The position numbers were made by a program, and so were the translations under genes. Positions 3,653 through 63,937 of a DNA stretch of 64,000 nt are shown here, in pieces. The stretch is taken from positions 62,001-126,000 of IMG/VR virus record IMGVR_UViG_3300043570_001980; one strand, given 5' to 3'. The stretch's first letter is position 1, and the number at the start of each line of letters is the position of its first letter. The notes beneath the pieces are model-generated. The model did no database searches. It was not told the origin of the DNA and saw only the letters and a list, made by a program, of their open reading frames with translations.

Positions 3653-4494
3653 TTCTGCCTGATTTTATTTTACCTAGTAGGATAAATCAACGTTGGGAAT
3701 ACAGCGGCATTGACAGCGTTAACTCTGCGCTAGATAGAGATCATTTTACTAGATACAAATTTACAGTAGATTACAAATACAACAGTCGAGGCTTCAGAGA
3801 TTCTGAATGGCCTGTGGATCTAAAAAAGTCAATTTGGTGTATTGGTGATAGCTTTACTGTGGGCATTGGAAGTCCGTTATCTCACACTTGGCCAAATATA
3901 CTACAGTCACAGTTAAAACAACGAACTATAAATGTAAGCATGGACGGTGGTAGTAATCCATGGATTAAAAGAAAAGCATTAACAGTTATTCAAGAAATTG
4001 TTCCTGAAACGGTAATCATACATTGGAGTTATCTACATCGTAGAGAAAATAGTTATCAAACAGTATTGAATAAAAAGTGGAGAGACTTTTACAACAATGT
4101 TAAAGATTCTTCTTGGCCCGCATGTCCCAACATCAACCACATGGATACCTTACCTAAATTTATATCTGACGAATTAAAAACATGTGATCAATCTTGGACA
4201 AATGTCAGTGATGAGGATCTGAAACTGCATTTTACTAGAAGCACAGATGAGGCAGACATAGCATTGACCATTGATTGTATTAACAAGATTGAAGAAAACA
4301 AAGGCAACTGTAACATAATTCACAGCGTTATTCCTAATTTTTCTGCGCCTGGTTTTAAATCAATGTTTCGCGAGCAATTACCTGATGTACAATTTATTCC
4401 TGAATTTGAAAAATTAGATCTTGCTAGAGACGGCTATCATTATGATATCAAAACTGCCGCTGCCTTTGTGGACAAGATTACAGATTTACTTTAA
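3649..4494 (+). CDS. SGNH/GDSL-like hypothetical protein
   Basis: YKYNSRGFRD, IGDSFTVG, C-terminal DGYHY. Confidence 0.55.
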   Translation: MILPDFILPSRINQRWEYSGIDSVNSALDRDHFTRYKFTVDYKYNSRGFRDSEWPVDLKKSIWCIGDSFTVGIGSPLSHTWPNILQSQLKQRTINVSMDGGSNPWIKRKALTVIQEIVPETVIIHWSYLHRRENSYQTVLNKKWRDFYNNVKDSSWPACPNINHMDTLPKFISDELKTCDQSWTNVSDEDLKLHFTRSTDEADIALTIDCINKIEENKGNCNIIHSVIPNFSAPGFKSMFREQLPDVQFIPEFEKLDLARDGYHYDIKTAAAFVDKITDLL

Positions 4495-12335: not shown

Positions 12336-13026
12336 AGTAGTTAATTCAAGTCAGCTATACTTTGATCAATTTGAGTATAGGGCTGTGTTTTACCTTCAAG
12401 AGTTGCCTTGTCTACGAAATTTAAAAAATGATCCTGACAAAGATCGTCAGATGATTTCCTGGAATGTGGATCAGCGAAAAAAATTCAAAGATCACCTAAG
12501 ACATGTTAACTGGGGAGGAAGCTGGCACAACCAAAATAGTTCAATACCCATTGGTGATGAAGTAGAACCAAATTTATTGTTGTTTTATGATTTTTATTCT
12601 TCAGAGCCCGACGTTAAAAAACTAGTGATTCAGTCAGGTGGTTACGGGTATCTATACACTAACAATAAAAAATACATACAAGAACTGGCTAGATTACCAT
12701 TTATTAAAAATGTCTACGGGTATCAAATCAATGTAGCGTTTGCAAAAGGAACCATTAGGTTAAAAAATCCAAAGCATTCTTATCGTTTATATTTTAAAGA
12801 TAGAAAAATAACCAAACAACAAAAAAGTTATTTGGTTAATTTCTTAAAGAACCACGAAGGGCAAATAAGACTAGGACCAGCACTTAAACATTGGGTAAAA
12901 AAAGACGAGTACTGTTATTTGTACGGAAACTTTTTTGTAGAATACGATCACCAATCTTTTGTAAGTATGCTTAGTCTTGTGAGTCCAAGCACAGTTAGAA
13001 AGACTGTAACCTTAATAAAAGCATAA
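12295..13026 (+). CDS. Hypothetical protein
   Basis: 243-aa AT-rich ORF filling the gap after clpA. Confidence 0.6.
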   Translation: MDTLSLTNSNPEFEVVNSSQLYFDQFEYRAVFYLQELPCLRNLKNDPDKDRQMISWNVDQRKKFKDHLRHVNWGGSWHNQNSSIPIGDEVEPNLLLFYDFYSSEPDVKKLVIQSGGYGYLYTNNKKYIQELARLPFIKNVYGYQINVAFAKGTIRLKNPKHSYRLYFKDRKITKQQKSYLVNFLKNHEGQIRLGPALKHWVKKDEYCYLYGNFFVEYDHQSFVSMLSLVSPSTVRKTVTLIKA

Positions 13027-53917: not shown

Positions 53918-54353
53918 AGCAGTTATTCCAAATCAATATTGGATCTTGAAAGAAAACGATCGTAAGATTGGTAACATTGAATCTGGACCTGACGGATTTT
54001 CTGTTAAAATAAAAGATCTAACCACGTGTTTTAAAACACTGAGTATGGTGCAACAACGTATTGGCATTGACTTTGAACCTATTAAACAAAGATCTGTACC
54101 TGAACCTAACCAAGTACACGGATATCCAACCACAGACCATCCATATAATCCAATTTTTGATGTTAAACGTCAACTGCCTATTTGGACGCAGGAAGAAAAA
54201 TCCAAGTCGTGGTTTGCCGCAGGATGGTATCGATTAAAGACCGGACGAGTCTGGAATGTTGTACAATGTCCAAAACTTATTACACTTCAGCGTTATCCAT
54301 ACACTGGACCATTTTATACCGAGGAAGAAGCCTGTGACAAATCCGTTTCGTGA
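53904..54353 (+). CDS. Hypothetical protein
   Basis: Coupled ORF. Confidence 0.6.
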   Translation: MIIAKAVIPNQYWILKENDRKIGNIESGPDGFSVKIKDLTTCFKTLSMVQQRIGIDFEPIKQRSVPEPNQVHGYPTTDHPYNPIFDVKRQLPIWTQEEKSKSWFAAGWYRLKTGRVWNVVQCPKLITLQRYPYTGPFYTEEEACDKSVS

Positions 54354-54705
54354 TCAAGAAAAATTTATGAGAGCCTGCGACCAAACAGTGGGTGAATTCA
54401 ATGGTACACAATATGATATGTATTGTGCGTTAATCGAAGAAGAGTTTAAAGAACTTCAACAAGCATTAGCCGATAACAATGATGTGGAGTGCTTGGATGC
54501 ACTGATCGACATCTTGGTTGTGACTATCGGTGCCATACAGTCAGCTGGGTTTGACGGTGAAGGTGCGTGGAAAGAAGTCATGAGTACAAACTTTGCCAAA
54601 ATCGACAAGTTAACTGGCAAGGTGCGTAAACGTGAAGATGGTAAGGTATTAAAGCCAGTGGGGTGGACCCCTCCTAATCTAGCACCTTATCTAAAAAGAA
54701 CATAA
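54334..54705 (+). CDS. MazG/HisE-like all-alpha NTP pyrophosphohydrolase
   Basis: EEEFKE, DALIDI, TNFAK, REDGKVLKP; GTG 54334. Confidence 0.8.
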   Translation: MTNPFRDQEKFMRACDQTVGEFNGTQYDMYCALIEEEFKELQQALADNNDVECLDALIDILVVTIGAIQSAGFDGEGAWKEVMSTNFAKIDKLTGKVRKREDGKVLKPVGWTPPNLAPYLKRT

Positions 54706-54911
54706 TGTTACACATTAACAAATTCATCGATCGAGTCAAAGCGGCAGAAAGCAGAAGTCAACGTGACTTGATCATGACCATCAACGAAGCCAGGGACTTG
54801 CACGGGGATATTACAAAATTACTTTTAAGTCTTCAAGTACTACGTGAACAGTCTACTGCAACCCCTGTGGAACCCGTAACCAGCATTGAGGTTGTCGGCG
54901 GCTCATTCTAA
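54705..54911 (+). CDS. Small hypothetical protein
   Basis: Coupled ORF. Confidence 0.55.
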   Translation: MLHINKFIDRVKAAESRSQRDLIMTINEARDLHGDITKLLLSLQVLREQSTATPVEPVTSIEVVGGSF

Positions 54912-54963
54912 AACTACCTAAAACTACCTACATAACGGGATAAATAAAAGTAGGAGTTTAACA

Positions 54964-55266
54964 ATGAGCAGACCAAAACCTAAAGTTCTAGTAGAACTAA
55001 CCAACAAAGTCAATTACAAGACCGAACAGGTACTTGCGGCTGAAGGGATATGGGCTGTGTTTTTTGACGGGCTACCTATCAACCTCAAAACATCAAATAT
55101 GCTAATTCAATATCCTGGCCCCAAGTACAAGAAGGTTAGTTTTTCCAACAGCGGCCATGCAATTAATCTAGCAAAAAAACTTAACACACAATTCAAGACT
55201 GACAAATTCTCAGTGGTGTTATTAAAGCAAGGTCCCCAGATTTTTCCAGATGGTAAACAAAAATGA
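54964..55266 (+). CDS. Hypothetical protein
   Basis: ATAAATA at 54940 and aggag SD. Confidence 0.6.
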   Translation: MSRPKPKVLVELTNKVNYKTEQVLAAEGIWAVFFDGLPINLKTSNMLIQYPGPKYKKVSFSNSGHAINLAKKLNTQFKTDKFSVVLLKQGPQIFPDGKQK

Positions 55267-55606
55267 ACTAACACAAACGTTAGTTGAATTATTACCCAAT
55301 TCATTATCTGTAACCACAGAAAAAGCACTCAAGACTTGGTACTGTAATATTCGATCCAATGGTGGGTTACGACTTACTGATTACGGCTACAAAGCTTTTC
55401 AATTCTTAGAGATTGAAAGTTGGAATGTGCCGATTGAGTTTAAAAATCTCAATAAGAAAGGTCTATTGGCACTAGACCGTAAACTGACCTTTCCTTATTA
55501 TATTGATTCAAAAAATAAACAGCTAGTTATGTTTTCTAGTAAGGAAGCAATGTTGGCAACTTTATACGGGGATTTACAAAAGTTTCTCGACAGTTATTCC
55601 GGGTAA
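55250..55606 (+). CDS. Hypothetical protein
   Basis: Coupled ORF. Confidence 0.55.
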   Translation: MVNKNELTQTLVELLPNSLSVTTEKALKTWYCNIRSNGGLRLTDYGYKAFQFLEIESWNVPIEFKNLNKKGLLALDRKLTFPYYIDSKNKQLVMFSSKEAMLATLYGDLQKFLDSYSG

Positions 55607-55687
55607 CTATAATCCACTATAATATTATCAGATATTATTGATAATATTATCGGATTATCAAGGTAATACTTGAGTATTATCTTATTT

Positions 55688-55727
55688 TGTTGTTTTTTTA
55701 CCACAATTTTGTGGCTTTTTTACCACA
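55688..55727. promoter_or_regulatory. Tandem palindromic operator-like sites TGT(T/G)G-N8-CCACA
   Basis: Two copies, at 55688-55705 and 55710-55727, 22 bp apart and just upstream of a -35 box. Confidence 0.55.
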
Positions 55728-55738
55728 GTTGTGTTTGG

Positions 55739-55767
55739 TTGACTGGAAATGCCCATTTTGCTATAAT
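55739..55767 (+). promoter_or_regulatory. Sigma70-type promoter, probably giving a leaderless mRNA
   Basis: TTGACT-17 nt-TATAAT, with ATG 7 nt after the -10 box. Confidence 0.75.
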
Positions 55768-55773
55768 ATATAC

Positions 55774-56115
55774 ATGAACACAAAAACAGTAACCCGTAAA
55801 AAGCGTACAGACCGCACTCACATCATTTATATGATCGAAAGCGGTACAGACTTCTACATTGGTGTCACAGCCAAGACCATGAGCACCGTTAAAAAGAGTG
55901 TGTTGGTTCGTTGCAACAAACACATTTATCGTATGCGTTCTGAAGACAAGTCATGGATGCTGTACGAGACCATGCGTGAGCGTGGTACTGACTCATTCAC
56001 TGTTCGTGTGATGGCTGTGGTGCGTGGCAAAACAGAAGCTCACAATTTTGAGCGTGACATGATCCGTAGCATGAAGCCCAACTTAAATACTGATGTTCGT
56101 GGAGTTAACTTTTAA
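55774..56115 (+). CDS. GIY-YIG-like endonuclease
   Basis: HIIY...FYIG...R...H...E. Start moved to ATG 55774. Confidence 0.65.
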   Translation: MNTKTVTRKKRTDRTHIIYMIESGTDFYIGVTAKTMSTVKKSVLVRCNKHIYRMRSEDKSWMLYETMRERGTDSFTVRVMAVVRGKTEAHNFERDMIRSMKPNLNTDVRGVNF

Positions 56116-56124
56116 TGGTGCAGT

Positions 56125-56277
56125 ATGAAAATCAAACAATCCAAACCTAGAAACTTTGTTGCCAAAGATTTGCGCACACCAAAATATCGCATGCGCAAAG
56201 AAGAATTAAAAACGGCATACCAACGACATGAAAAACATCAAACACGTTGTTGTCTTGTTGACTTTAAAATTGCATAA
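56125..56277 (+). CDS. ArfA-like alternative ribosome-rescue factor (50 aa; not in ORF track)
   Basis: NFVAKDLRTPKYRMRKEELKTAYQRHEKH aligns by eye with E. coli ArfA [32 protein letters not shown]. Confidence 0.55.
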   Translation: MKIKQSKPRNFVAKDLRTPKYRMRKEELKTAYQRHEKHQTRCCLVDFKIA

Positions 56278-56286
56278 GTGTATAAT
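56258..56286 (+). promoter_or_regulatory. Sigma70-type promoter
   Basis: TTGACT-17 nt-TATAAT, with TG extension. Confidence 0.75.
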
Positions 56287-56311
56287 CAGTATCTAACCAG
56301 GAGTATATCAT

Positions 56312-56857
56312 ATGATCACAATGAAAGAATGGATGGAACTAGTTGACTATAAAATCACCGAAGGTGGTGATTTTGGCTGGGACTGTTACGGATCAAATAG
56401 TTACCAGCTAAGTAGCTGGAACGGTGTTCACGACCAGGGTGGGTGGAGTTTCAATATTGTATTCAGTACCAAGAGTCAAAAGGTCTACGAAGTAGCAGTC
56501 TGCGACTACACCAACAATCGTGCATATCGCATGATCAATCCCGACTATGTTAAAAAGTACAACAAAGAAGCCAAGACTCGCGGCGAAATGCTGAACCAAG
56601 CCTGGGACGATGTTGACTATGTGGATCTAGAAGTGGACGACGACTTTATCCAAAAATGTCTTGCTATCAAAGCCGGAGAAGTGTATGATACCCGTGTGAG
56701 TGTGCCTATTGATCTGTCAGATGATGGCATGTTTACACTGATGAAAATGGCACACGAACGCGACATTACATTTAATCAAATGGTCGAACAAGTCCTACGA
56801 GAACAATTGGGTCTGCTGGGTATGGATTCAGTTGTTGACAACAAAAACAAATTCTAA
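56312..56857 (+). CDS. Hypothetical protein with a C-terminal ribbon-helix-helix-like segment
   Basis: aggag SD; C-terminal LMKMAHERDITFNQMVEQVL. Confidence 0.6.
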   Translation: MITMKEWMELVDYKITEGGDFGWDCYGSNSYQLSSWNGVHDQGGWSFNIVFSTKSQKVYEVAVCDYTNNRAYRMINPDYVKKYNKEAKTRGEMLNQAWDDVDYVDLEVDDDFIQKCLAIKAGEVYDTRVSVPIDLSDDGMFTLMKMAHERDITFNQMVEQVLREQLGLLGMDSVVDNKNKF

Positions 56858-56863
56858 TATAAT
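56835..56863 (+). promoter_or_regulatory. Sigma70 consensus promoter for the tRNA cluster
   Basis: TTGACA-17 nt-TATAAT, 11 nt before the first tRNA. Confidence 0.85.
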
Positions 56864-56873
56864 TACGTTTATA

Positions 56874-56951
56874 GGGCCGTTAGCTCATGTTGGTTAGAGC
56901 AGTGGACTCATAATCCATTGGTGCTGTGTTCGACTCACAGACGGCCCACCA
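56874..56951 (+). tRNA. tRNA with CAT anticodon, most like tRNA-Ile2 (lysidine)
   Basis: Cloverleaf GGGCCGT/ACGGCCC, loop CTCATAA, TTCGA, encoded CCA. Resembles ileX rather than Met tRNAs. Confidence 0.85.
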
Positions 56952-56958
56952 GACAATT

Positions 56959-57045
56959 GCGACTGTGGTGAAATAGGTAGACACAAGAGACTTAAAATCT
57001 CTCGCTCGCAAGGGCATGCCGGTTCGATTCCGGCCAGTCGCACCA
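56959..57045 (+). tRNA. tRNA-Leu(TAA)
   Basis: GCGACTG/CAGTCGC acceptor, AGAGA-CTTAAAA-TCTCT, long variable arm, CCA. Confidence 0.93.
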
Positions 57046-57050
57046 ACAAC

Positions 57051-57125
57051 CTGGCCTTAGTTCAATGGACAGAACAGTAGCCTTCTAAGCTATCAATACA
57101 GGTTCGATTCCTGTAGGCCGGACCA
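57051..57125 (+). tRNA. tRNA-Arg(TCT)
   Basis: CTGGCCT/AGGCCGG, GTAGC-CTTCTAA-GCTAT, TTCGA, CCA. Confidence 0.92.
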
Positions 57126-57140
57126 TAACAAGGATTTACA

Positions 57141-57386
57141 ATGACTAATTCGCAGAAATCAAAAGTAGAGTTTGCACCTGGTGCATTTGATGATTTTGAT
57201 GGAACACAAGAAGAACTTGATGCTTTGCAGAAAGAGCTTGTTGAAATGTTTTCTAATCTAACACCAGAAGAATTAGCAGAACAAAGTCGAGCTGTGGACT
57301 TTGAAGAACTCATGGAAGAAGATCCTGCGCTGGCAGAAAAACTGTTTAACAGTTTTAACGACGAGCCCACAAGAAAACTGCAATGA
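57141..57386 (+). CDS. Acidic hypothetical protein
   Basis: aagga SD. Confidence 0.6.
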   Translation: MTNSQKSKVEFAPGAFDDFDGTQEELDALQKELVEMFSNLTPEELAEQSRAVDFEELMEEDPALAEKLFNSFNDEPTRKLQ

Positions 57387-57934
57387 CCAAGATAAACAGC
57401 AGTCCTGAGCGTAATACCTTCCAAGTAGAAGGTGCTATCAAGCGGGCAGAAGAAGCAGGCCAAGAGCCTGACCAAGACTATATTGACATGTGGGAACAGA
57501 TCAAGATTGACGATGCTAACAAGATCCACGATCCTGAGTGGCAAAAAGACAATATGGAGTACGATCTACGCAGTACTTTATGGATCTGTGACAAAGTAAA
57601 AGCCAGCGACAATTATGCACAGAACTTGTATGCGGCCATGTGTAACATGCAGTTTCAAAAATTAGAAACTTGGCCTATCTTAAAGAATCAGCGGTGGAGT
57701 TGTAGTTGGCGTCATAGTGGTGGTATCATTGCAGACATGCAAGAAAAAGGCGACTACATTGATTGGTACTGTAGCGGCATTGGTAACAAAGAAAACGGTT
57801 TTGGATTAGATGGGTACGAACCCACATTGGATTCTGATGGCAGAGACTACGTTGCCGAAGGTGTAGTCACAGAAGAGATCCGAGAAGATCTACGTAAACT
57901 TGGATGGACGCCAATTGAATGGGAAGATGATTAA
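57383..57934 (+). CDS. Hypothetical protein
   Basis: NMEYDL, YAQNLYAAMCN, WSCSWR, YIDWYCSG. Confidence 0.65.
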   Translation: MTKINSSPERNTFQVEGAIKRAEEAGQEPDQDYIDMWEQIKIDDANKIHDPEWQKDNMEYDLRSTLWICDKVKASDNYAQNLYAAMCNMQFQKLETWPILKNQRWSCSWRHSGGIIADMQEKGDYIDWYCSGIGNKENGFGLDGYEPTLDSDGRDYVAEGVVTEEIREDLRKLGWTPIEWEDD

Positions 57935-58145
57935 CAGTTTATCAGGGTGGTATGTGGCCAGTATTACGCCTCCTGTAAACGGTCGCGTTTCTAAACATGT
58001 ATATGTGGGGTGGACACCTTGCATAGATTGGTGCAAAGAGCAATTTGGAAATAATGCAATAGATGGTTGGAGATTCATCGGAGAAGGTGTATTTGAATTT
58101 AGAGATGAAAAAATGTTAACATTGTTCTTACTGAGGTGGGCATGA
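57927..58145 (+). CDS. Small hypothetical protein
   Basis: ATG 57927; ends FEFRDEKMLTLFLLRWA. Confidence 0.5.
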   Translation: MINSLSGWYVASITPPVNGRVSKHVYVGWTPCIDWCKEQFGNNAIDGWRFIGEGVFEFRDEKMLTLFLLRWA

Positions 58146-58360
58146 TCGAAGTAACTCTCGAAGGACACAACCCAACTCGTGTTATGGAAATAGTACAAGA
58201 GTTGAGAGACAGCGGTCTTCAACAAGGCTCCGACTTTGACTTTCAATATCATCCTCCCAAGTTTGATGCAATAAATGGTCACGAAATGAAACCTAAATAT
58301 ACAATTTTTTTCTTTTACAACAATGCAACTGCCAGTTGGTTTGCATTAAAACACAAGTGA
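58142..58360 (+). CDS. Small hypothetical protein
   Basis: ATGA overlap; gagg SD. Confidence 0.55.
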   Translation: MIEVTLEGHNPTRVMEIVQELRDSGLQQGSDFDFQYHPPKFDAINGHEMKPKYTIFFFYNNATASWFALKHK

Positions 58361-58367
58361 GGTAATT

Positions 58368-58724
58368 ATGGATTGGTCTAAACAAGAAATGGTACGACTG
58401 CTTAAAAGTGCTCCTGGCACACAGTACCAAGAAGCAGATGACACGCAGAAAATGGTCATTAGAGATTGGGTGCGTAGTTTGCTACAAGCAGGTTCTGTCA
58501 GCCTTGAGTTTGTCAAGGCTGATGGTACAATTCGACAAATGAAATGTACTCTTAATCACGACTTGATCAAATGGGAAACTGTTACAGAATCGGCACTCCC
58601 CAAGAAAGAACGCAAAGAACCCACAGAGGATGTTGTGCGGGTGTATGACTTGGAAAAACAAGAATGGCGTAGTTTTAGATTTGACCGACTGCATAAAATT
58701 ACAACCGAGTTATCTTTTACCTAA
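58368..58724 (+). CDS. DUF2693/WYL_2-like SH3-fold protein
   Basis: FVKADGTIRQMKCTL and VYDLEKQEWRSFRFD. Confidence 0.7.
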   Translation: MDWSKQEMVRLLKSAPGTQYQEADDTQKMVIRDWVRSLLQAGSVSLEFVKADGTIRQMKCTLNHDLIKWETVTESALPKKERKEPTEDVVRVYDLEKQEWRSFRFDRLHKITTELSFT

Positions 58725-63693: not shown

Positions 63694-63783
63694 GGAGCGG
63701 TGGCCGAACGGTAAGGCAGCGGATTGCTAATCCGTACAACGTGTTAAAGCGTTGACTGGGTTCGACTCCCAGTCGCTCCGCCA
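63694..63783 (+). tRNA. tRNA-Ser(GCT)
   Basis: GGAGCGG/TCGCTCC, loop TTGCTAA, long variable arm, GCCA end. Confidence 0.93.
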
Positions 63784-63789
63784 AGTTTT

Positions 63790-63854
63790 GAGAGTCACAT
63801 CGCCTGGATACTTCCTTTGGTAACAAAGCACTAGGTCCTGCAACCGTGGCTCTC
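63790..63854 (+). ncRNA. Candidate small structured RNA between tRNA genes
   Basis: GAGAGTCAC/GTGGCTCTC, CCTGG/CTAGG, CTTTG-GTAA-CAAAG. Confidence 0.45.
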
Positions 63855-63862
63855 CCTTATTT

Positions 63863-63937
63863 GCTCGATTCGTCTATCGGTTAGGACATGCGGTTTTCAT
63901 CCGCATAAGAGCGGTTCGACTCCGCTATCGAGTACCA
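63863..63937 (+). tRNA. tRNA-Glu(TTC)
   Basis: GCTCGAT/ATCGAGT, TGCGG-TTTTCAT-CCGCA, TTCGA, CCA. Confidence 0.93.

What the first reader, a model, noticed from the sequence alone, without database searches (positions are those of the whole stretch)
56125..56277. Hidden ArfA-like ribosome-rescue factor
Seen: a 50-aa ORF below the track cutoff. Against E. coli ArfA (recalled sequence) it keeps N, L, P, aromatic-R-x-R-x-E, K, Y-x-R and K-H, but lacks the KGKG segment, and it has a short hydrophobic tail as ArfA does. Known: ArfA recruits RF2 to ribosomes stalled on non-stop mRNA. Inference: the phage rescues ribosomes stalled by host mRNA/tRNA-cleaving defences, or a KGKG-less mimic blocks rescue.
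Basis: partly seen in the sequence, partly recalled or inferred. Interest (0 to 1): 0.75.

Follow-up and report, generated by a model that had tools for sequence, protein, structure and literature searches.

The report
Phage-encoded short ArfA-like ribosome-rescue factor
The 50-codon ORF is a real, conserved gene of a freshwater jumbo phage and a divergent relative of the bacterial ribosome-rescue factor ArfA; the same small gene sits unrecognised in hundreds of phage genomes, so phages may commonly bring their own factor for freeing stalled ribosomes.

Summary
The ORF at 56125-56277 (+) exists as described, and its resemblance to E. coli ArfA is real.

**Homology.**
- Alone, the ORF misses Pfam ArfA. 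It scores 19 bits on DUF7230, below that family's cut-off.
- It belongs to a family of 238 clusters of 36-119 aa proteins, found on at least 489 viral contigs.
- A profile of that family aligns with ArfA (hhalign probability 90%, E 1.6e-6; reversed controls 0.3-0.4%).
- Chromosomal SAR11 proteins bridge the two. They carry the phage family's AKDLRTPKY motif plus ArfA's KKGKGS motif, pass Pfam's ArfA cut-off, and are 46% identical to the ORF.
- GKG-less copies are stable chromosomal genes in SAR86, always between tatC and acs, and also occur in SAR11. The missing KGKG is therefore a natural variant, not a sign of a decoy.

**Interface.** A complex model places the ORF on E. coli RF2 at the known ArfA interface (score 0.51, best control 0.01). 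The tool rates this weak support that may come from memory of solved structures.

**Where it differs from ArfA.**
- The "hydrophobic tail" is lineage-specific and is encoded by the next gene's promoter.
- There is no arfA-type 3' hairpin.
- Two of the three RF2-activating hydrophobic residues are charged.
- The tunnel segment is only weakly basic.

**Verdict.** ArfA-superfamily homology is well supported. Rescue activity is inferred, not shown. The proposed anti-defence role is untested.

The parts
56125..56277 (+). CDS of the 50-aa ArfA-like protein, including the TAA stop
   Evidence: ORF. 100% identical copies lie on 6 other viral contigs, and 84-92% identical copies on relatives including a 345-kb contig. 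The family has 238 clusters.
56158..56226 (+). Conserved core, codons 12-34 (VAKDLRTPKYRMRK-E-K--Y-R). It aligns with E. coli ArfA residues 16-41.
   Evidence: Invariant columns in A1. Nearly invariant A13, D15, L16, R17, P19, K20, Y21, R24 and R34 across 145 members. Only synonymous changes among close relatives. hhalign alignment to ArfA.
56185..56199 (+). Codons 21-25 (Y-R-M-R-K). They are the counterpart of ArfA F25-V29, whose backbone pairs with RF2 strand 213-217.
   Evidence: Alignment. ArfA-RF2 contacts from PMC5378476. The complex model puts ORF residues 21-28 against RF2 211-221.
56200..56247 (+). Codons 26-41, the counterpart of the ArfA segment that lies in the empty mRNA tunnel (ArfA 30-48). 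It lacks G35-K36-G37.
   Evidence: Alignment. Net charge from R24 on is +3 over 18 residues, against a family median of +6 and +8 over 21 residues in E. coli ArfA.
56258..56286 (+). Sigma-70-like promoter (TTGACT, 17 nt, TATAAT) for the next gene (56312..56857). It overlaps the last six codons and the stop of the ORF.
   Evidence: Promoter scan, 11 of 12 matches. Both hexamers are invariant in four related contigs.
55739..55767 (+). Sigma-70-like promoter (TTGACT, 17 nt, TG-TATAAT). It is the likely start of the transcript that carries the GIY-YIG gene and the ArfA-like gene.
   Evidence: Promoter scan, 11 of 12 matches with an extended -10 TG. No terminator-like site lies between it and 56277 on the + strand. 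That it drives the ORF is inferred.
55774..56115 (+). Upstream same-strand gene, a GIY-YIG homing-endonuclease-like protein. Its stop lies 9 nt before the ArfA-like start codon.
   Evidence: PHROGs homing endonuclease families, E 2.5e-5 and 3.6e-5. Weak Pfam GIY-YIG hit.

Best explanation
The ORF is a real early-region gene of a roughly 340-kb freshwater jumbo phage. It encodes a short, GKG-less member of the ArfA superfamily, on the branch that Pfam partly captures as DUF7230.

**Most likely mechanism (inferred by homology).**
- After mRNA truncation leaves a ribosome with an empty A site and mRNA channel, the C-terminal half (K29 to R41) enters the vacant channel.
- The N-terminal part (N10-P19) holds RF2 in its open form, so that RF2 hydrolyses the peptidyl-tRNA without a stop codon.

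**Difference from enterobacterial arfA.** This gene has an ordinary stop codon and no 3' hairpin, and it already has the length of the active truncated ArfA. Its product should therefore not be kept low by tmRNA tagging. The phage would supply rescue capacity unconditionally, freeing ribosomes trapped on decaying or cleaved messages for phage translation.

**Shown:** gene reality, conservation, homology to ArfA, and lack of the GKG loop and the hairpin.
**Inferred:** ribosome binding, RF2 recruitment, the benefit to the phage, and the timing of expression.
For: **Real gene and wide family.**
- 238 clusters.
- At least 489 viral contigs.
- 72 cultured-phage records.
- Purifying selection on the core.

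**Homology to ArfA.**
- BLASTP against E. coli ArfA, E 0.002.
- The family HMM finds E. coli ArfA at 21.5 bits, E 1e-6 among 124 sequences.
- hhalign 90.1%, E 1.6e-6 over 39 columns. The stricter set gives 87.8%; reversed controls give 0.3-0.4%.
- In Pfam scans of the family, 93 of 145 members hit DUF7230 and 14 of 145 hit ArfA; every other Pfam family was matched by at most 3 members.
- One member (P0109) scores equally on both models.
- IMG names some members ArfA.

**Bridging sequences.**
- SAR11 chromosomal ORFs combine AKDLRTPKY with KKGKGSF-RK.
- They score 32.1 and 31.6 bits on Pfam ArfA, whose cut-off is 25.5.
- They are 46% identical to the ORF, E 2e-9.

**GKG-less forms are cellular genes.**
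- In SAR86 the gene always lies between tatC and acs, even where TatC is only 57% identical.
- 21 of 81 genomes of that order and 18 of 61 Pelagibacterales match.
- Both GKG-plus and GKG-less forms occur in Pelagibacterales.
- The SAR86 and SAR11 genomes checked have RF1 and RF2 but no ArfB-sized RF-1 protein.

**RF2 interface.**
- The model with E. coli RF2 scores ipSAE 0.51 against a best control of 0.01. The tool calls this 'weak support'. That mark was reached by 58 of 80 solved complexes and 2 of 110 mismatches; scores at or under 0.60 came from only 7 of those 80 and from both mismatches.
- The contacts are RF2 196-198, 211-221 and 320-322 with ORF 10-17 and 21-28.
- These match the cryo-EM contacts: ArfA 25-29 with RF2 213-217, plus V198, F217 and W319 (PMC5378476).
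- RF2 keeps these residues in SAR11 and SAR86.

**The phage needs a host release factor.** The 342-kb and 345-kb relatives, 95% and 99% complete, encode no RF-1-domain protein and no Pth.

**No arfA-type regulation.** The 3' region folds no better than shuffles (z 0.65).

**Length.** 47 residues of E. coli ArfA suffice for function (PMC5378476), and the ORF covers the equivalent of residues 7-47.
Against: - The ORF alone matches neither Pfam ArfA (no hit at E<=10) nor DUF7230 above its cut-off (19.2 against 27 bits).
- phmmer against all PDB chains does not find ArfA.
- The KGKGS loop is shortened by three residues.
- Of the hydrophobic patch L19/L24/F25 that contacts RF2 W319, two positions are D15 and K20.
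- The position of A18, where even A18T kills release in E. coli, is K14. The activation step may therefore differ or be absent.
- The tunnel segment of this copy is among the least basic in the family, +3 against a median of +6.
- The complex score is in the band the tool calls more often wrong than right without a strong prior, and it may reflect memory of solved ArfA-RF2 structures.
- There is no transcript evidence; the RNA runs did not cover the ORF.
- There is no conserved translation-related neighbourhood.
- No biochemical datum exists for any member of this branch.
Confidence: 0.6

Rival explanations
1. An ArfA-derived decoy. The protein still binds the stalled ribosome and/or RF2 but cannot switch RF2 to its active form. 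It would block ArfA-type rescue, or tie up RF2, as a way of manipulating host translation.
For: - K14 sits where A18T already abolishes release without abolishing RF2 binding (PMC5378476).
- D15 and K20 replace two of the three hydrophobic residues that contact RF2 W319.
- The GKG of the decoding-centre loop is missing.
- The modelled interface is consistent with binding but says nothing about activation.
Against: - The same K14/D15/K20 residues occur in SAR11 chromosomal proteins that pass Pfam's ArfA cut-off.
- They also occur in the syntenic tatC-acs gene of SAR86. In the genomes checked, those cells have no other alternative rescue factor. A cell has no obvious use for a rescue blocker.
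- The GKG deletion toggles among chromosomal copies within one bacterial order.
Confidence: 0.12
2. A rescue factor of ArfA ancestry with a changed partner. Because its N-terminal patch differs, it would recruit RF1, or either release factor, as Francisella ArfT does. Alternatively it would act on a different class of stalled ribosome.
For: - The hydrophobic patch that explains ArfA's strict RF2 dependence is not conserved.
- ArfT shows that a 40-aa factor can use RF1 or RF2 (PMC6299226).
Against: - The strand that pairs with RF2 domain 2 is conserved (Y-R-x-R-V/K).
- The model docks the protein on RF2 exactly as ArfA sits.
- RF2 contact residues are conserved in hosts that carry this branch.
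- RF1 was not tested here.
Confidence: 0.15
3. A small basic RNA-binding peptide with a role unrelated to ribosome rescue. The ArfA likeness would come from composition or convergence.
For: - The protein is short, K/R-rich and probably unstructured on its own.
- The ORF alone gives no significant hit to ArfA models.
- It lies in a T4-like early region full of small genes of unknown function.
Against: - Reversed-sequence controls remove the profile signal (0.3-0.4% against 88-90%).
- The similarity is positional over 39 columns, anchored on N, P, aromatic-R-x-R and Y-x-R-K-x-K-H.
- Intermediates carry both motif sets.
Confidence: 0.06
4. Not a gene: a chance ORF between a homing-endonuclease gene and a promoter.
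For: - It is short, and many ORFs of similar size occur by chance in the region.
- The Shine-Dalgarno-like element is weak.
- No RNA reads were found.
Against: - 238 protein clusters and at least 489 viral contigs carry it.
- The core shows only synonymous change among relatives.
- Chromosomal homologues sit in a fixed bacterial locus.
Confidence: 0.01

Closest known systems
E. coli ArfA (YhdL; Pfam PF03889), the RF2-dependent alternative ribosome-rescue factor
   Same: - The order of motifs is the same: N-x-[IV]...L-x-x-P-x-[FY]-R-x-R-x-E...K...Y-x-R-x-x-K-H.
- The ORF has about the size of the active truncated form.
- It is modelled on the same RF2 surface.
   Different: - No hit to PF03889 by itself.
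- G35-K36-G37 are missing.
- A18, L19 and L24 are replaced by K, D and K.
- The tunnel segment is less basic.
- It has an ordinary stop codon, no 3' hairpin, and no homologous hydrophobic C-terminal extension.
Chromosomal ArfA of SAR11 (Pelagibacterales), 35-42 aa
   Same: - 46% identity over 35 residues, E 2e-9.
- Shares the AKDLRTPKY-x-R core.
- Short, with an ordinary stop.
   Different: - Most SAR11 copies keep KKGKGSF and pass Pfam's ArfA cut-off; some are GKG-less like the phage copy.
- They are cellular, not viral.
SAR86 chromosomal GKG-less homologue between tatC and acs
   Same: - Same core and the same three-residue deletion.
- Below the DUF7230 cut-off, like the phage ORF.
   Different: It is a vertically inherited cell gene in a fixed locus, with a more basic tail.
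Pfam DUF7230 (PF23876), for example the unannotated 36-aa ORF of Acinetobacter phage 133
   Same: - It is the best Pfam match of the ORF (19.2 bits) and matches 93 of 145 relatives.
- Small phage proteins in T4-like early regions.
- The phage 133 ORF scores 48.8 bits.
   Different: - The window ORF is below the 27-bit cut-off.
- The DUF7230 core reads AKAVRTPAFKMQVV rather than AKDLRTPKYRMRK.
- By its name, Pfam records no function for the family.
Phage genes already annotated as ArfA: pelagiphage HTVC027P gp30 and Citromicrobium phage RXM g10
   Same: They are phage-encoded ArfA homologues. HTVC027P gp30 is transcribed early and late during infection (PMC12753301; PMC8953757).
   Different: - HTVC027P gp30 is reported to carry the PF03889 domain, which this ORF does not match; the RXM paper names g10 ArfA without stating the basis.
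- I did not compare their sequences with the ORF.
- Neither paper reports a functional test of the gene.
ArfT (Francisella), BrfA (Bacillus) and ArfB
   Same: ArfT and BrfA are likewise small release-factor-dependent rescue factors with basic tails (PMC6299226; PMC6881298).
   Different: - ArfT is regarded as independently evolved and uses RF1 or RF2.
- ArfB carries its own GGQ domain, which a 50-aa protein cannot hold.
- No sequence comparison with ArfT or BrfA was run.

Membership tests
ArfA (Pfam PF03889) | Score at or above the Pfam gathering cut-off (25.5 bits) | tested here: not met
   No PF03889 hit at E<=10 for the ORF or in six frames of the 128.8-kb contig. E. coli ArfA scores 89.5 bits and the SAR11 homologues 31.6-32.1 bits.
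ArfA (Pfam PF03889) | Homology detectable at profile level | tested here: met
   hhalign 90.1%, E 1.6e-6. The strict set gives 87.8% and reversed controls 0.3-0.4%. 14 of 145 family members hit PF03889. BLASTP to a PF03889-positive SAR11 protein gives E 2e-9. With only the six closest relatives the probability is 20%, E 0.0011.
ArfA (Pfam PF03889) | Mid-region strand (ArfA 25-29, F-R-Q-R-V) that extends the beta-sheet of RF2 domain 2 | tested here: met
   Y21-R-M-R-K25 aligns with it. The model contacts are ORF 21-28 with RF2 211-221. The role of this strand is taken from PMC5378476.
ArfA (Pfam PF03889) | Conserved KGKGS loop | tested here: not met
   There is a three-residue gap at G35-K36-G37. 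Only 1 of 145 relatives has G[KR]G. According to PMC6299226, no single residue of this motif is essential.
ArfA (Pfam PF03889) | N-terminal hydrophobic patch (L19, L24, F25) and small residue at A18 that activate RF2 | tested here: not met
   The aligned residues are D15, K20, Y21 and K14. Their roles are taken from PMC5378476. The same residues occur in PF03889-positive SAR11 proteins.
ArfA (Pfam PF03889) | Positively charged C-terminal segment able to fill the empty mRNA tunnel | tested here: inconclusive
   K29, R34, K37 and R41 plus two His are present, but E26, E27 and E36 lower the net charge to +3. The family median is +6 and E. coli ArfA is +8.
ArfA (Pfam PF03889) | Binding to RF2 | tested here: inconclusive
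   ipSAE 0.51 against a best control of 0.01, rated 'weak support'. The interface equals the known one and may be recalled from solved complexes.
ArfA (Pfam PF03889) | Stop-codon-independent peptide release on non-stop ribosomes; rescue of ssrA/arfA lethality | not testable with these tools
   This needs biochemistry or genetics.
Enterobacterial arfA regulation | 3' hairpin (RNase III site or terminator) that makes the mRNA non-stop, plus a hydrophobic C-terminal extension that is removed | tested here: not met
   The fold of 56200-56320 has z 0.65, and 147 of 200 shuffles fold at least as well. The tail is encoded by a promoter and is lineage-specific.
DUF7230 (Pfam PF23876) | Score at or above the gathering cut-off (27 bits) | tested here: not met
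   19.2 bits, E 1.4e-3. 93 of 145 relatives match at E<=10, best 2e-9. The Acinetobacter phage 133 ORF scores 48.8 bits.
ArfB / release-factor family | RF-1 domain with GGQ | tested here: not met
   No PF00472 match in the contig or in two near-complete relatives. The ORF is only 50 aa.
ArfT (Francisella) | Sequence similarity to the 40-aa ArfT with its KKGGSTNKK tail | not tested
   No ArfT sequence was fetched. Only the description in PMC6299226 was read.

The most novel reading that the evidence does not exclude
Phages of many lineages carry a constitutive short-form ArfA: freshwater jumbo phages, T4-like Acinetobacter phages, and Agrobacterium, Rhizobium and Roseobacter phages. It escapes the tmRNA-dependent control that keeps cellular ArfA low. 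Its altered activation patch (K14/D15/K20, no GKG) defines a mechanistically distinct way of switching on a release factor. The gene would be a general phage tool for recycling ribosomes stranded on cleaved mRNA, whether the cleavage comes from the phage's own host shut-off or from RNA-cleaving defence systems.
Probability: 0.25. Interest if true: 0.75.

Novelty: new variant of a known kind. Interest (0 to 1): 0.6.

Why it matters
ArfA is usually described as a back-up system of some beta- and gammaproteobacteria. Phage copies have so far been noted only as annotations in two phage genome papers.

This analysis links a Pfam "unknown function" family (DUF7230), and a much larger set of 36-70 aa phage proteins, to ArfA through natural intermediates. 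It also shows that GKG-less versions are ordinary chromosomal genes in SAR86 and SAR11.

If the phage proteins are active, three things follow:
- Ribosome rescue joins tRNAs and other translation parts among the functions phages commonly import.
- The minimal requirements for RF2 activation would need revising, since no GKG loop and a charged "hydrophobic patch" would suffice.
- Cultured Acinetobacter, Agrobacterium and Roseobacter phages offer a direct way to ask what non-stop ribosome stalling costs a phage during infection.

If the proteins are not active, the family is still an example of a small gene that annotation pipelines miss. It is unannotated in phage 133 and labelled "hypothetical" elsewhere.

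Tried and rejected
**Searches with the single ORF that found nothing useful.**
- NCBIfam and PHROGs gave no family.
- phmmer against PDB chains gave only a chance hit to a mitoribosomal protein at E 8.
- DNA megablast of the region against cultured phages matched only the tRNA genes.

**tRNA adjacency as a functional clue: rejected.** Only the window phage's close relatives (8 loci) have tRNAs within 2 kb; one further locus has a tRNA cluster about 2.5 kb away. The other 71 of 80 viral loci have none.

**Neighbourhood analysis.** The recurrent neighbours are a MazG-like NTP pyrophosphohydrolase, a WYL_2 protein, DsbA and RNase H. That is T4-like early-region synteny, not a translation module.

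**Search for a phage release factor, ArfB or Pth.** None in the contig or in two near-complete relatives.

**arfA-like 3' hairpin.** None.

**Rfam scan of 54000-58500.** Only the three tRNAs.

**Transcription evidence.** Three metatranscriptome runs gave no coverage of 56086-56301. This is uninformative, because only assembled contigs of unrelated samples were available.

**tblastn of the SAR11 ArfA against cultured phages.** No match, probably because of the low-complexity filter on a lysine-rich 38-mer.

**PF03889 in 301 genomes of the class of a SAR86 genome.** Only 3 matches, so this gave few extra ArfA sequences.

**Co-variation of RF2 with the changed ArfA patch.** Not seen. V/I198, F217 and W319 are conserved.

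**Technical and literature notes.**
It was repeated with a 52-row subset.
- A literature search for DUF7230 found no paper.
Full report
**1. The observation**

The window has an ATG-to-TAA ORF at 56125..56277 on the + strand encoding 50 residues. It begins 9 nt after the stop of a same-strand GIY-YIG homing-endonuclease-like gene (55774-56115). It has only a weak GGTG element 4 nt upstream.

I took the E. coli K-12 arfA gene from the annotated RefSeq record rather than from memory. BLASTP aligns ORF 10-41 with ArfA 14-48: 12/35 identities, one three-residue gap, E 0.002 for the pair.

An ORF of this size is not evidence of a gene by itself, since one search lists dozens. I therefore looked for conservation.

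**2. It is a real gene of a large family**

- The word-indexed protein search found the identical protein on 39 contigs, the longest 342 kb. It also found five relatives of 68-86% identity.
- The window is part of a 128.8-kb IMG/VR contig estimated 35% complete. Relatives of 342 and 345 kb are 95-99% complete. The DNA is found in more than 20 lake-water metagenome runs from 2020-2024. This is a freshwater jumbo phage.
- A profile of the six sequences, searched exhaustively against 1.84 billion representatives, found 238 clusters at E<=1e-3. All of the 150 listed are 36-119 aa and share (K/R)N-x-[VI]-A-K-D-L-R-T-P-K-Y-R-x-R-V-V-x-S-K-K-x-Y-x-R-K-x-K-H.
- Among the nearest relatives, codons 12-34 show only synonymous substitutions. 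All replacements fall in codons 6-11 and 35-50.

**3. Relation to ArfA**

*The ORF alone.* It gives no Pfam ArfA hit and no NCBIfam or PHROGs family. It scores 19.2 bits on DUF7230, whose cut-off is 27. phmmer against PDB does not reach ArfA.

*The family.*
- Among 145 members scanned one by one, 93 hit DUF7230 and 14 hit ArfA. No other Pfam family was matched by more than 3 members.
- The family HMM finds E. coli ArfA at 21.5 bits.
- hhalign of the family against an ArfA alignment gives 90.1% probability, E 1.6e-6, over 39 columns.
- With the one G[KR]G-containing family member (P0109) and the three non-enterobacterial ArfA sequences removed, it is 87.8%.
- With either alignment reversed, which preserves composition, it drops to 0.3-0.4%.
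- With only the six closest relatives it is 20%, E 0.0011.

*Natural intermediates are the strongest evidence.*
- A scan of one genome per prokaryotic species found 22 bacterial loci.
- Pelagibacteraceae chromosomal ORFs of 35-38 aa combine the phage family's N-F-I-A-K-D-L-R-T-P-K-Y with ArfA's K-K-G-K-G-S-F-x-R-K.
- They pass Pfam's ArfA cut-off at 32.1 and 31.6 bits.
- They are 46% identical to the phage ORF, E 2e-9.
- One metagenomic member (P0109) scores about equally on both Pfam models, and E. coli ArfA itself weakly touches DUF7230.
- IMG already labels some members "stalled ribosome alternative rescue factor ArfA".

I conclude that the ORF, DUF7230 and ArfA form one superfamily.

**4. 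Is the missing KGKG a defect?**

- In SAR86 genomes a GKG-less copy lies immediately after tatC and before acetyl-CoA synthetase in every locus examined. This holds even where TatC has diverged to 57% identity. That is vertical inheritance of a cell gene, not a prophage.
- 21 of 81 genomes of that order and 18 of 61 Pelagibacterales match the family profile.
- Within Pelagibacterales, both GKG-containing and GKG-less chromosomal forms occur.
- The SAR86 and SAR11 genomes checked contain RF1 and RF2 but no ArfB-like third RF-1 protein. E. coli, searched the same way, shows four.
- The SAR86 genomes have no canonical ArfA. They are incomplete, so this means "not found", not "absent".

These data make a working GKG-less rescue factor more plausible than a decoy.

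**5. Mapping onto the known mechanism**

From the cryo-EM study of ArfA-RF2 on the ribosome (PMC5378476):
- ArfA 31-48 fills the mRNA tunnel.
- ArfA 25-29 pairs with RF2 213-217.
- L19, L24 and F25 contact RF2 W319, V198 and F217.
- A18T blocks release without blocking RF2 binding.
- 47 residues suffice for function.

On the hhalign alignment the ORF covers ArfA 7-47.
- It keeps the strand (Y21-R-M-R-K25) and the Y-x-R...K-H tunnel anchors.
- It has K14, D15 and K20 at the positions of A18, L19 and L24.
- Its tunnel segment has net charge +3, against a family median of +6 and +8 in E. coli.
- The same K/D/K residues are in the SAR11 and SAR86 cell proteins, whose RF2 keeps V/I198, F217 and W319. 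The whole clade must therefore build its N-terminal part differently. A D15-K20 salt bridge replacing the L19-L24 contact is my speculation.

A complex prediction of the ORF (with its family alignment) and E. coli RF2 scored ipSAE 0.51 against 0.01 for the best of three controls.
- The tool rates this "weak support". The mark was reached by 58 of 80 solved complexes and 2 of 110 mismatches. Scores of 0.60 or less came from only 7 of those 80 and from both mismatches.
- The tool warns that memory of solved complexes can produce such a result.
- The interface residues are RF2 196-198, 211-221 and 320-322 with ORF 10-17 and 21-28, which are those of the ArfA-RF2 structure.
- I read this as confirming likeness, not as proof of binding.

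**6. What is not ArfA-like**

- The C-terminal "hydrophobic tail" (LVDFKIA) occurs only in this phage lineage.
- It is encoded by a TTGACT-17-TATAAT site at 56258-56286 that precedes the next gene and its strong AGGAG ribosome-binding site. Both hexamers are invariant in relatives.
- The 3' part of the ORF folds no better than shuffled sequence (z 0.65), so there is no counterpart of the arfA hairpin that makes the E. coli message non-stop.
- Together with the ordinary stop codon, this suggests the phage protein is made as a ready short form outside tmRNA control. This is inference.
- Similar promoter-like sites at 55739-55767 and 56835-56863 fit a T4-like early region. The first probably drives the homing-endonuclease gene and this ORF.

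**7. Context**

- The three tRNA genes 600 nt downstream accompany the gene only in close relatives of this phage.
- Across 80 viral loci the recurrent neighbours are a MazG-like pyrophosphohydrolase, a WYL_2 protein (74 of 80 loci; in the window at 58368-58724), DsbA and RNase H. That is T4-like synteny without a translation theme.
- Neither the contig nor two near-complete relatives encode a release factor, ArfB or Pth. Any release activity must use a host factor.
- Metatranscriptome contigs did not cover the ORF, which is uninformative.
- Rfam finds only the tRNAs.

**8. What is already known**

- Two papers annotate ArfA in phages: pelagiphage HTVC027P gp30, with a PF03889 domain and expressed early and late (PMC12753301), and Citromicrobium phage RXM g10 (PMC8953757). 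Neither reports a functional test of the gene.
- No paper mentions DUF7230.
- In the cultured-phage collection a typical family member matches 72 records: 60 Acinetobacter T4-like phages, plus Agrobacterium (including the jumbo phage Atu_ph07), Rhizobium, Ochrobactrum and Roseobacter phages. Nearly all the records listed are labelled "hypothetical protein" or are unannotated under the match.
- In Acinetobacter phage 133 the 36-aa ORF is not annotated at all and overlaps the end of another CDS. It scores 48.8 bits on DUF7230.

**9. Verdict**

- Homology to ArfA: about 0.9.
- RF-dependent rescue as the function of this copy: about 0.6. The main doubts are the changed activation patch, the weakly basic tail and the absence of any experiment on this branch.
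- The anti-defence idea is possible but has no support from context.
- Novelty: a new variant of a known kind (short, GKG-less, unregulated, phage-borne). The useful side result is that DUF7230 and many unannotated phage ORFs belong with ArfA.

Noticed in passing
window 55774-56115 (+): A GIY-YIG homing-endonuclease-like gene sits directly upstream of the ArfA-like ORF (PHROGs E 2.5e-5). The last 30 nt of it and the junction are identical in four related contigs. Whether it is a mobile insertion was not examined.
   Followed up: partly
window 55739-55767, 56258-56286, 56835-56863 (+): Three near-consensus sigma-70-type promoters (11-12 of 12 matches, 17-nt spacers) lie within 1.1 kb. The last one is directly in front of the tRNA cluster. 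This suggests host-RNA-polymerase-driven early transcription.
   Followed up: partly
window 56874-57125 and 63694-63937 (+): tRNA genes Met(CAT), Leu(TAA) and Arg(TCT), and further on Ser(GCT) and Glu(TTC). tRNA-Met is about 90% identical to that of Acinetobacter T4-like phages.
   Followed up: no
window 58368-58724 (+): A WYL_2 / Sm-like SH3 barrel protein (PF10902, E 1.5e-16; phrog_1086). Its homologues lie within 3 kb of the ArfA-like gene in 74 of 80 viral loci. This may be plain synteny or a functional link; I did not resolve which.
   Followed up: partly
window 54256-54705 (+): A MazG/PRA-PH-like all-alpha NTP pyrophosphohydrolase (PF01503, E 5.5e-9). A homologous neighbour is also found upstream of the ArfA-like gene in T4-like loci.
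   Followed up: no
L122:2504-2614 (Acinetobacter phage 133, HM114315.1, about 12484-12594, minus strand): An unannotated 36-aa ORF that is a full DUF7230 member (48.8 bits). It overlaps the 3' end of annotated CDS Acj133p022 in another frame.
   Followed up: yes
L088:3998-4132 and the other SAR86 loci (L087-L092, L097, L100, L102, L123-L132): In SAR86 the ArfA-like gene starts inside or right at the end of tatC (L088: tatC ends at 4014, the ArfA-like ATG is at 3998). This suggests translational coupling with tatC.
   Followed up: partly
L084, L085, L086, L091 (short contigs in bacterial MAGs): Family members most like the phage type sit on 2.6-14 kb contigs binned into Bacteriovoracaceae, Gammaproteobacteria and Bacteroidota MAGs from lakes and rivers. 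These may be phage contigs mis-binned into MAGs; I did not check.
   Followed up: no
L109 and L110 (genomes G059 and G101): These are further divergent ArfA forms with KKGKGSY. One has T-P-K-F-R-S-R, close to the phage motif. The other sits in a 241-codon open frame that is probably an artefact of high G+C.
   Followed up: no
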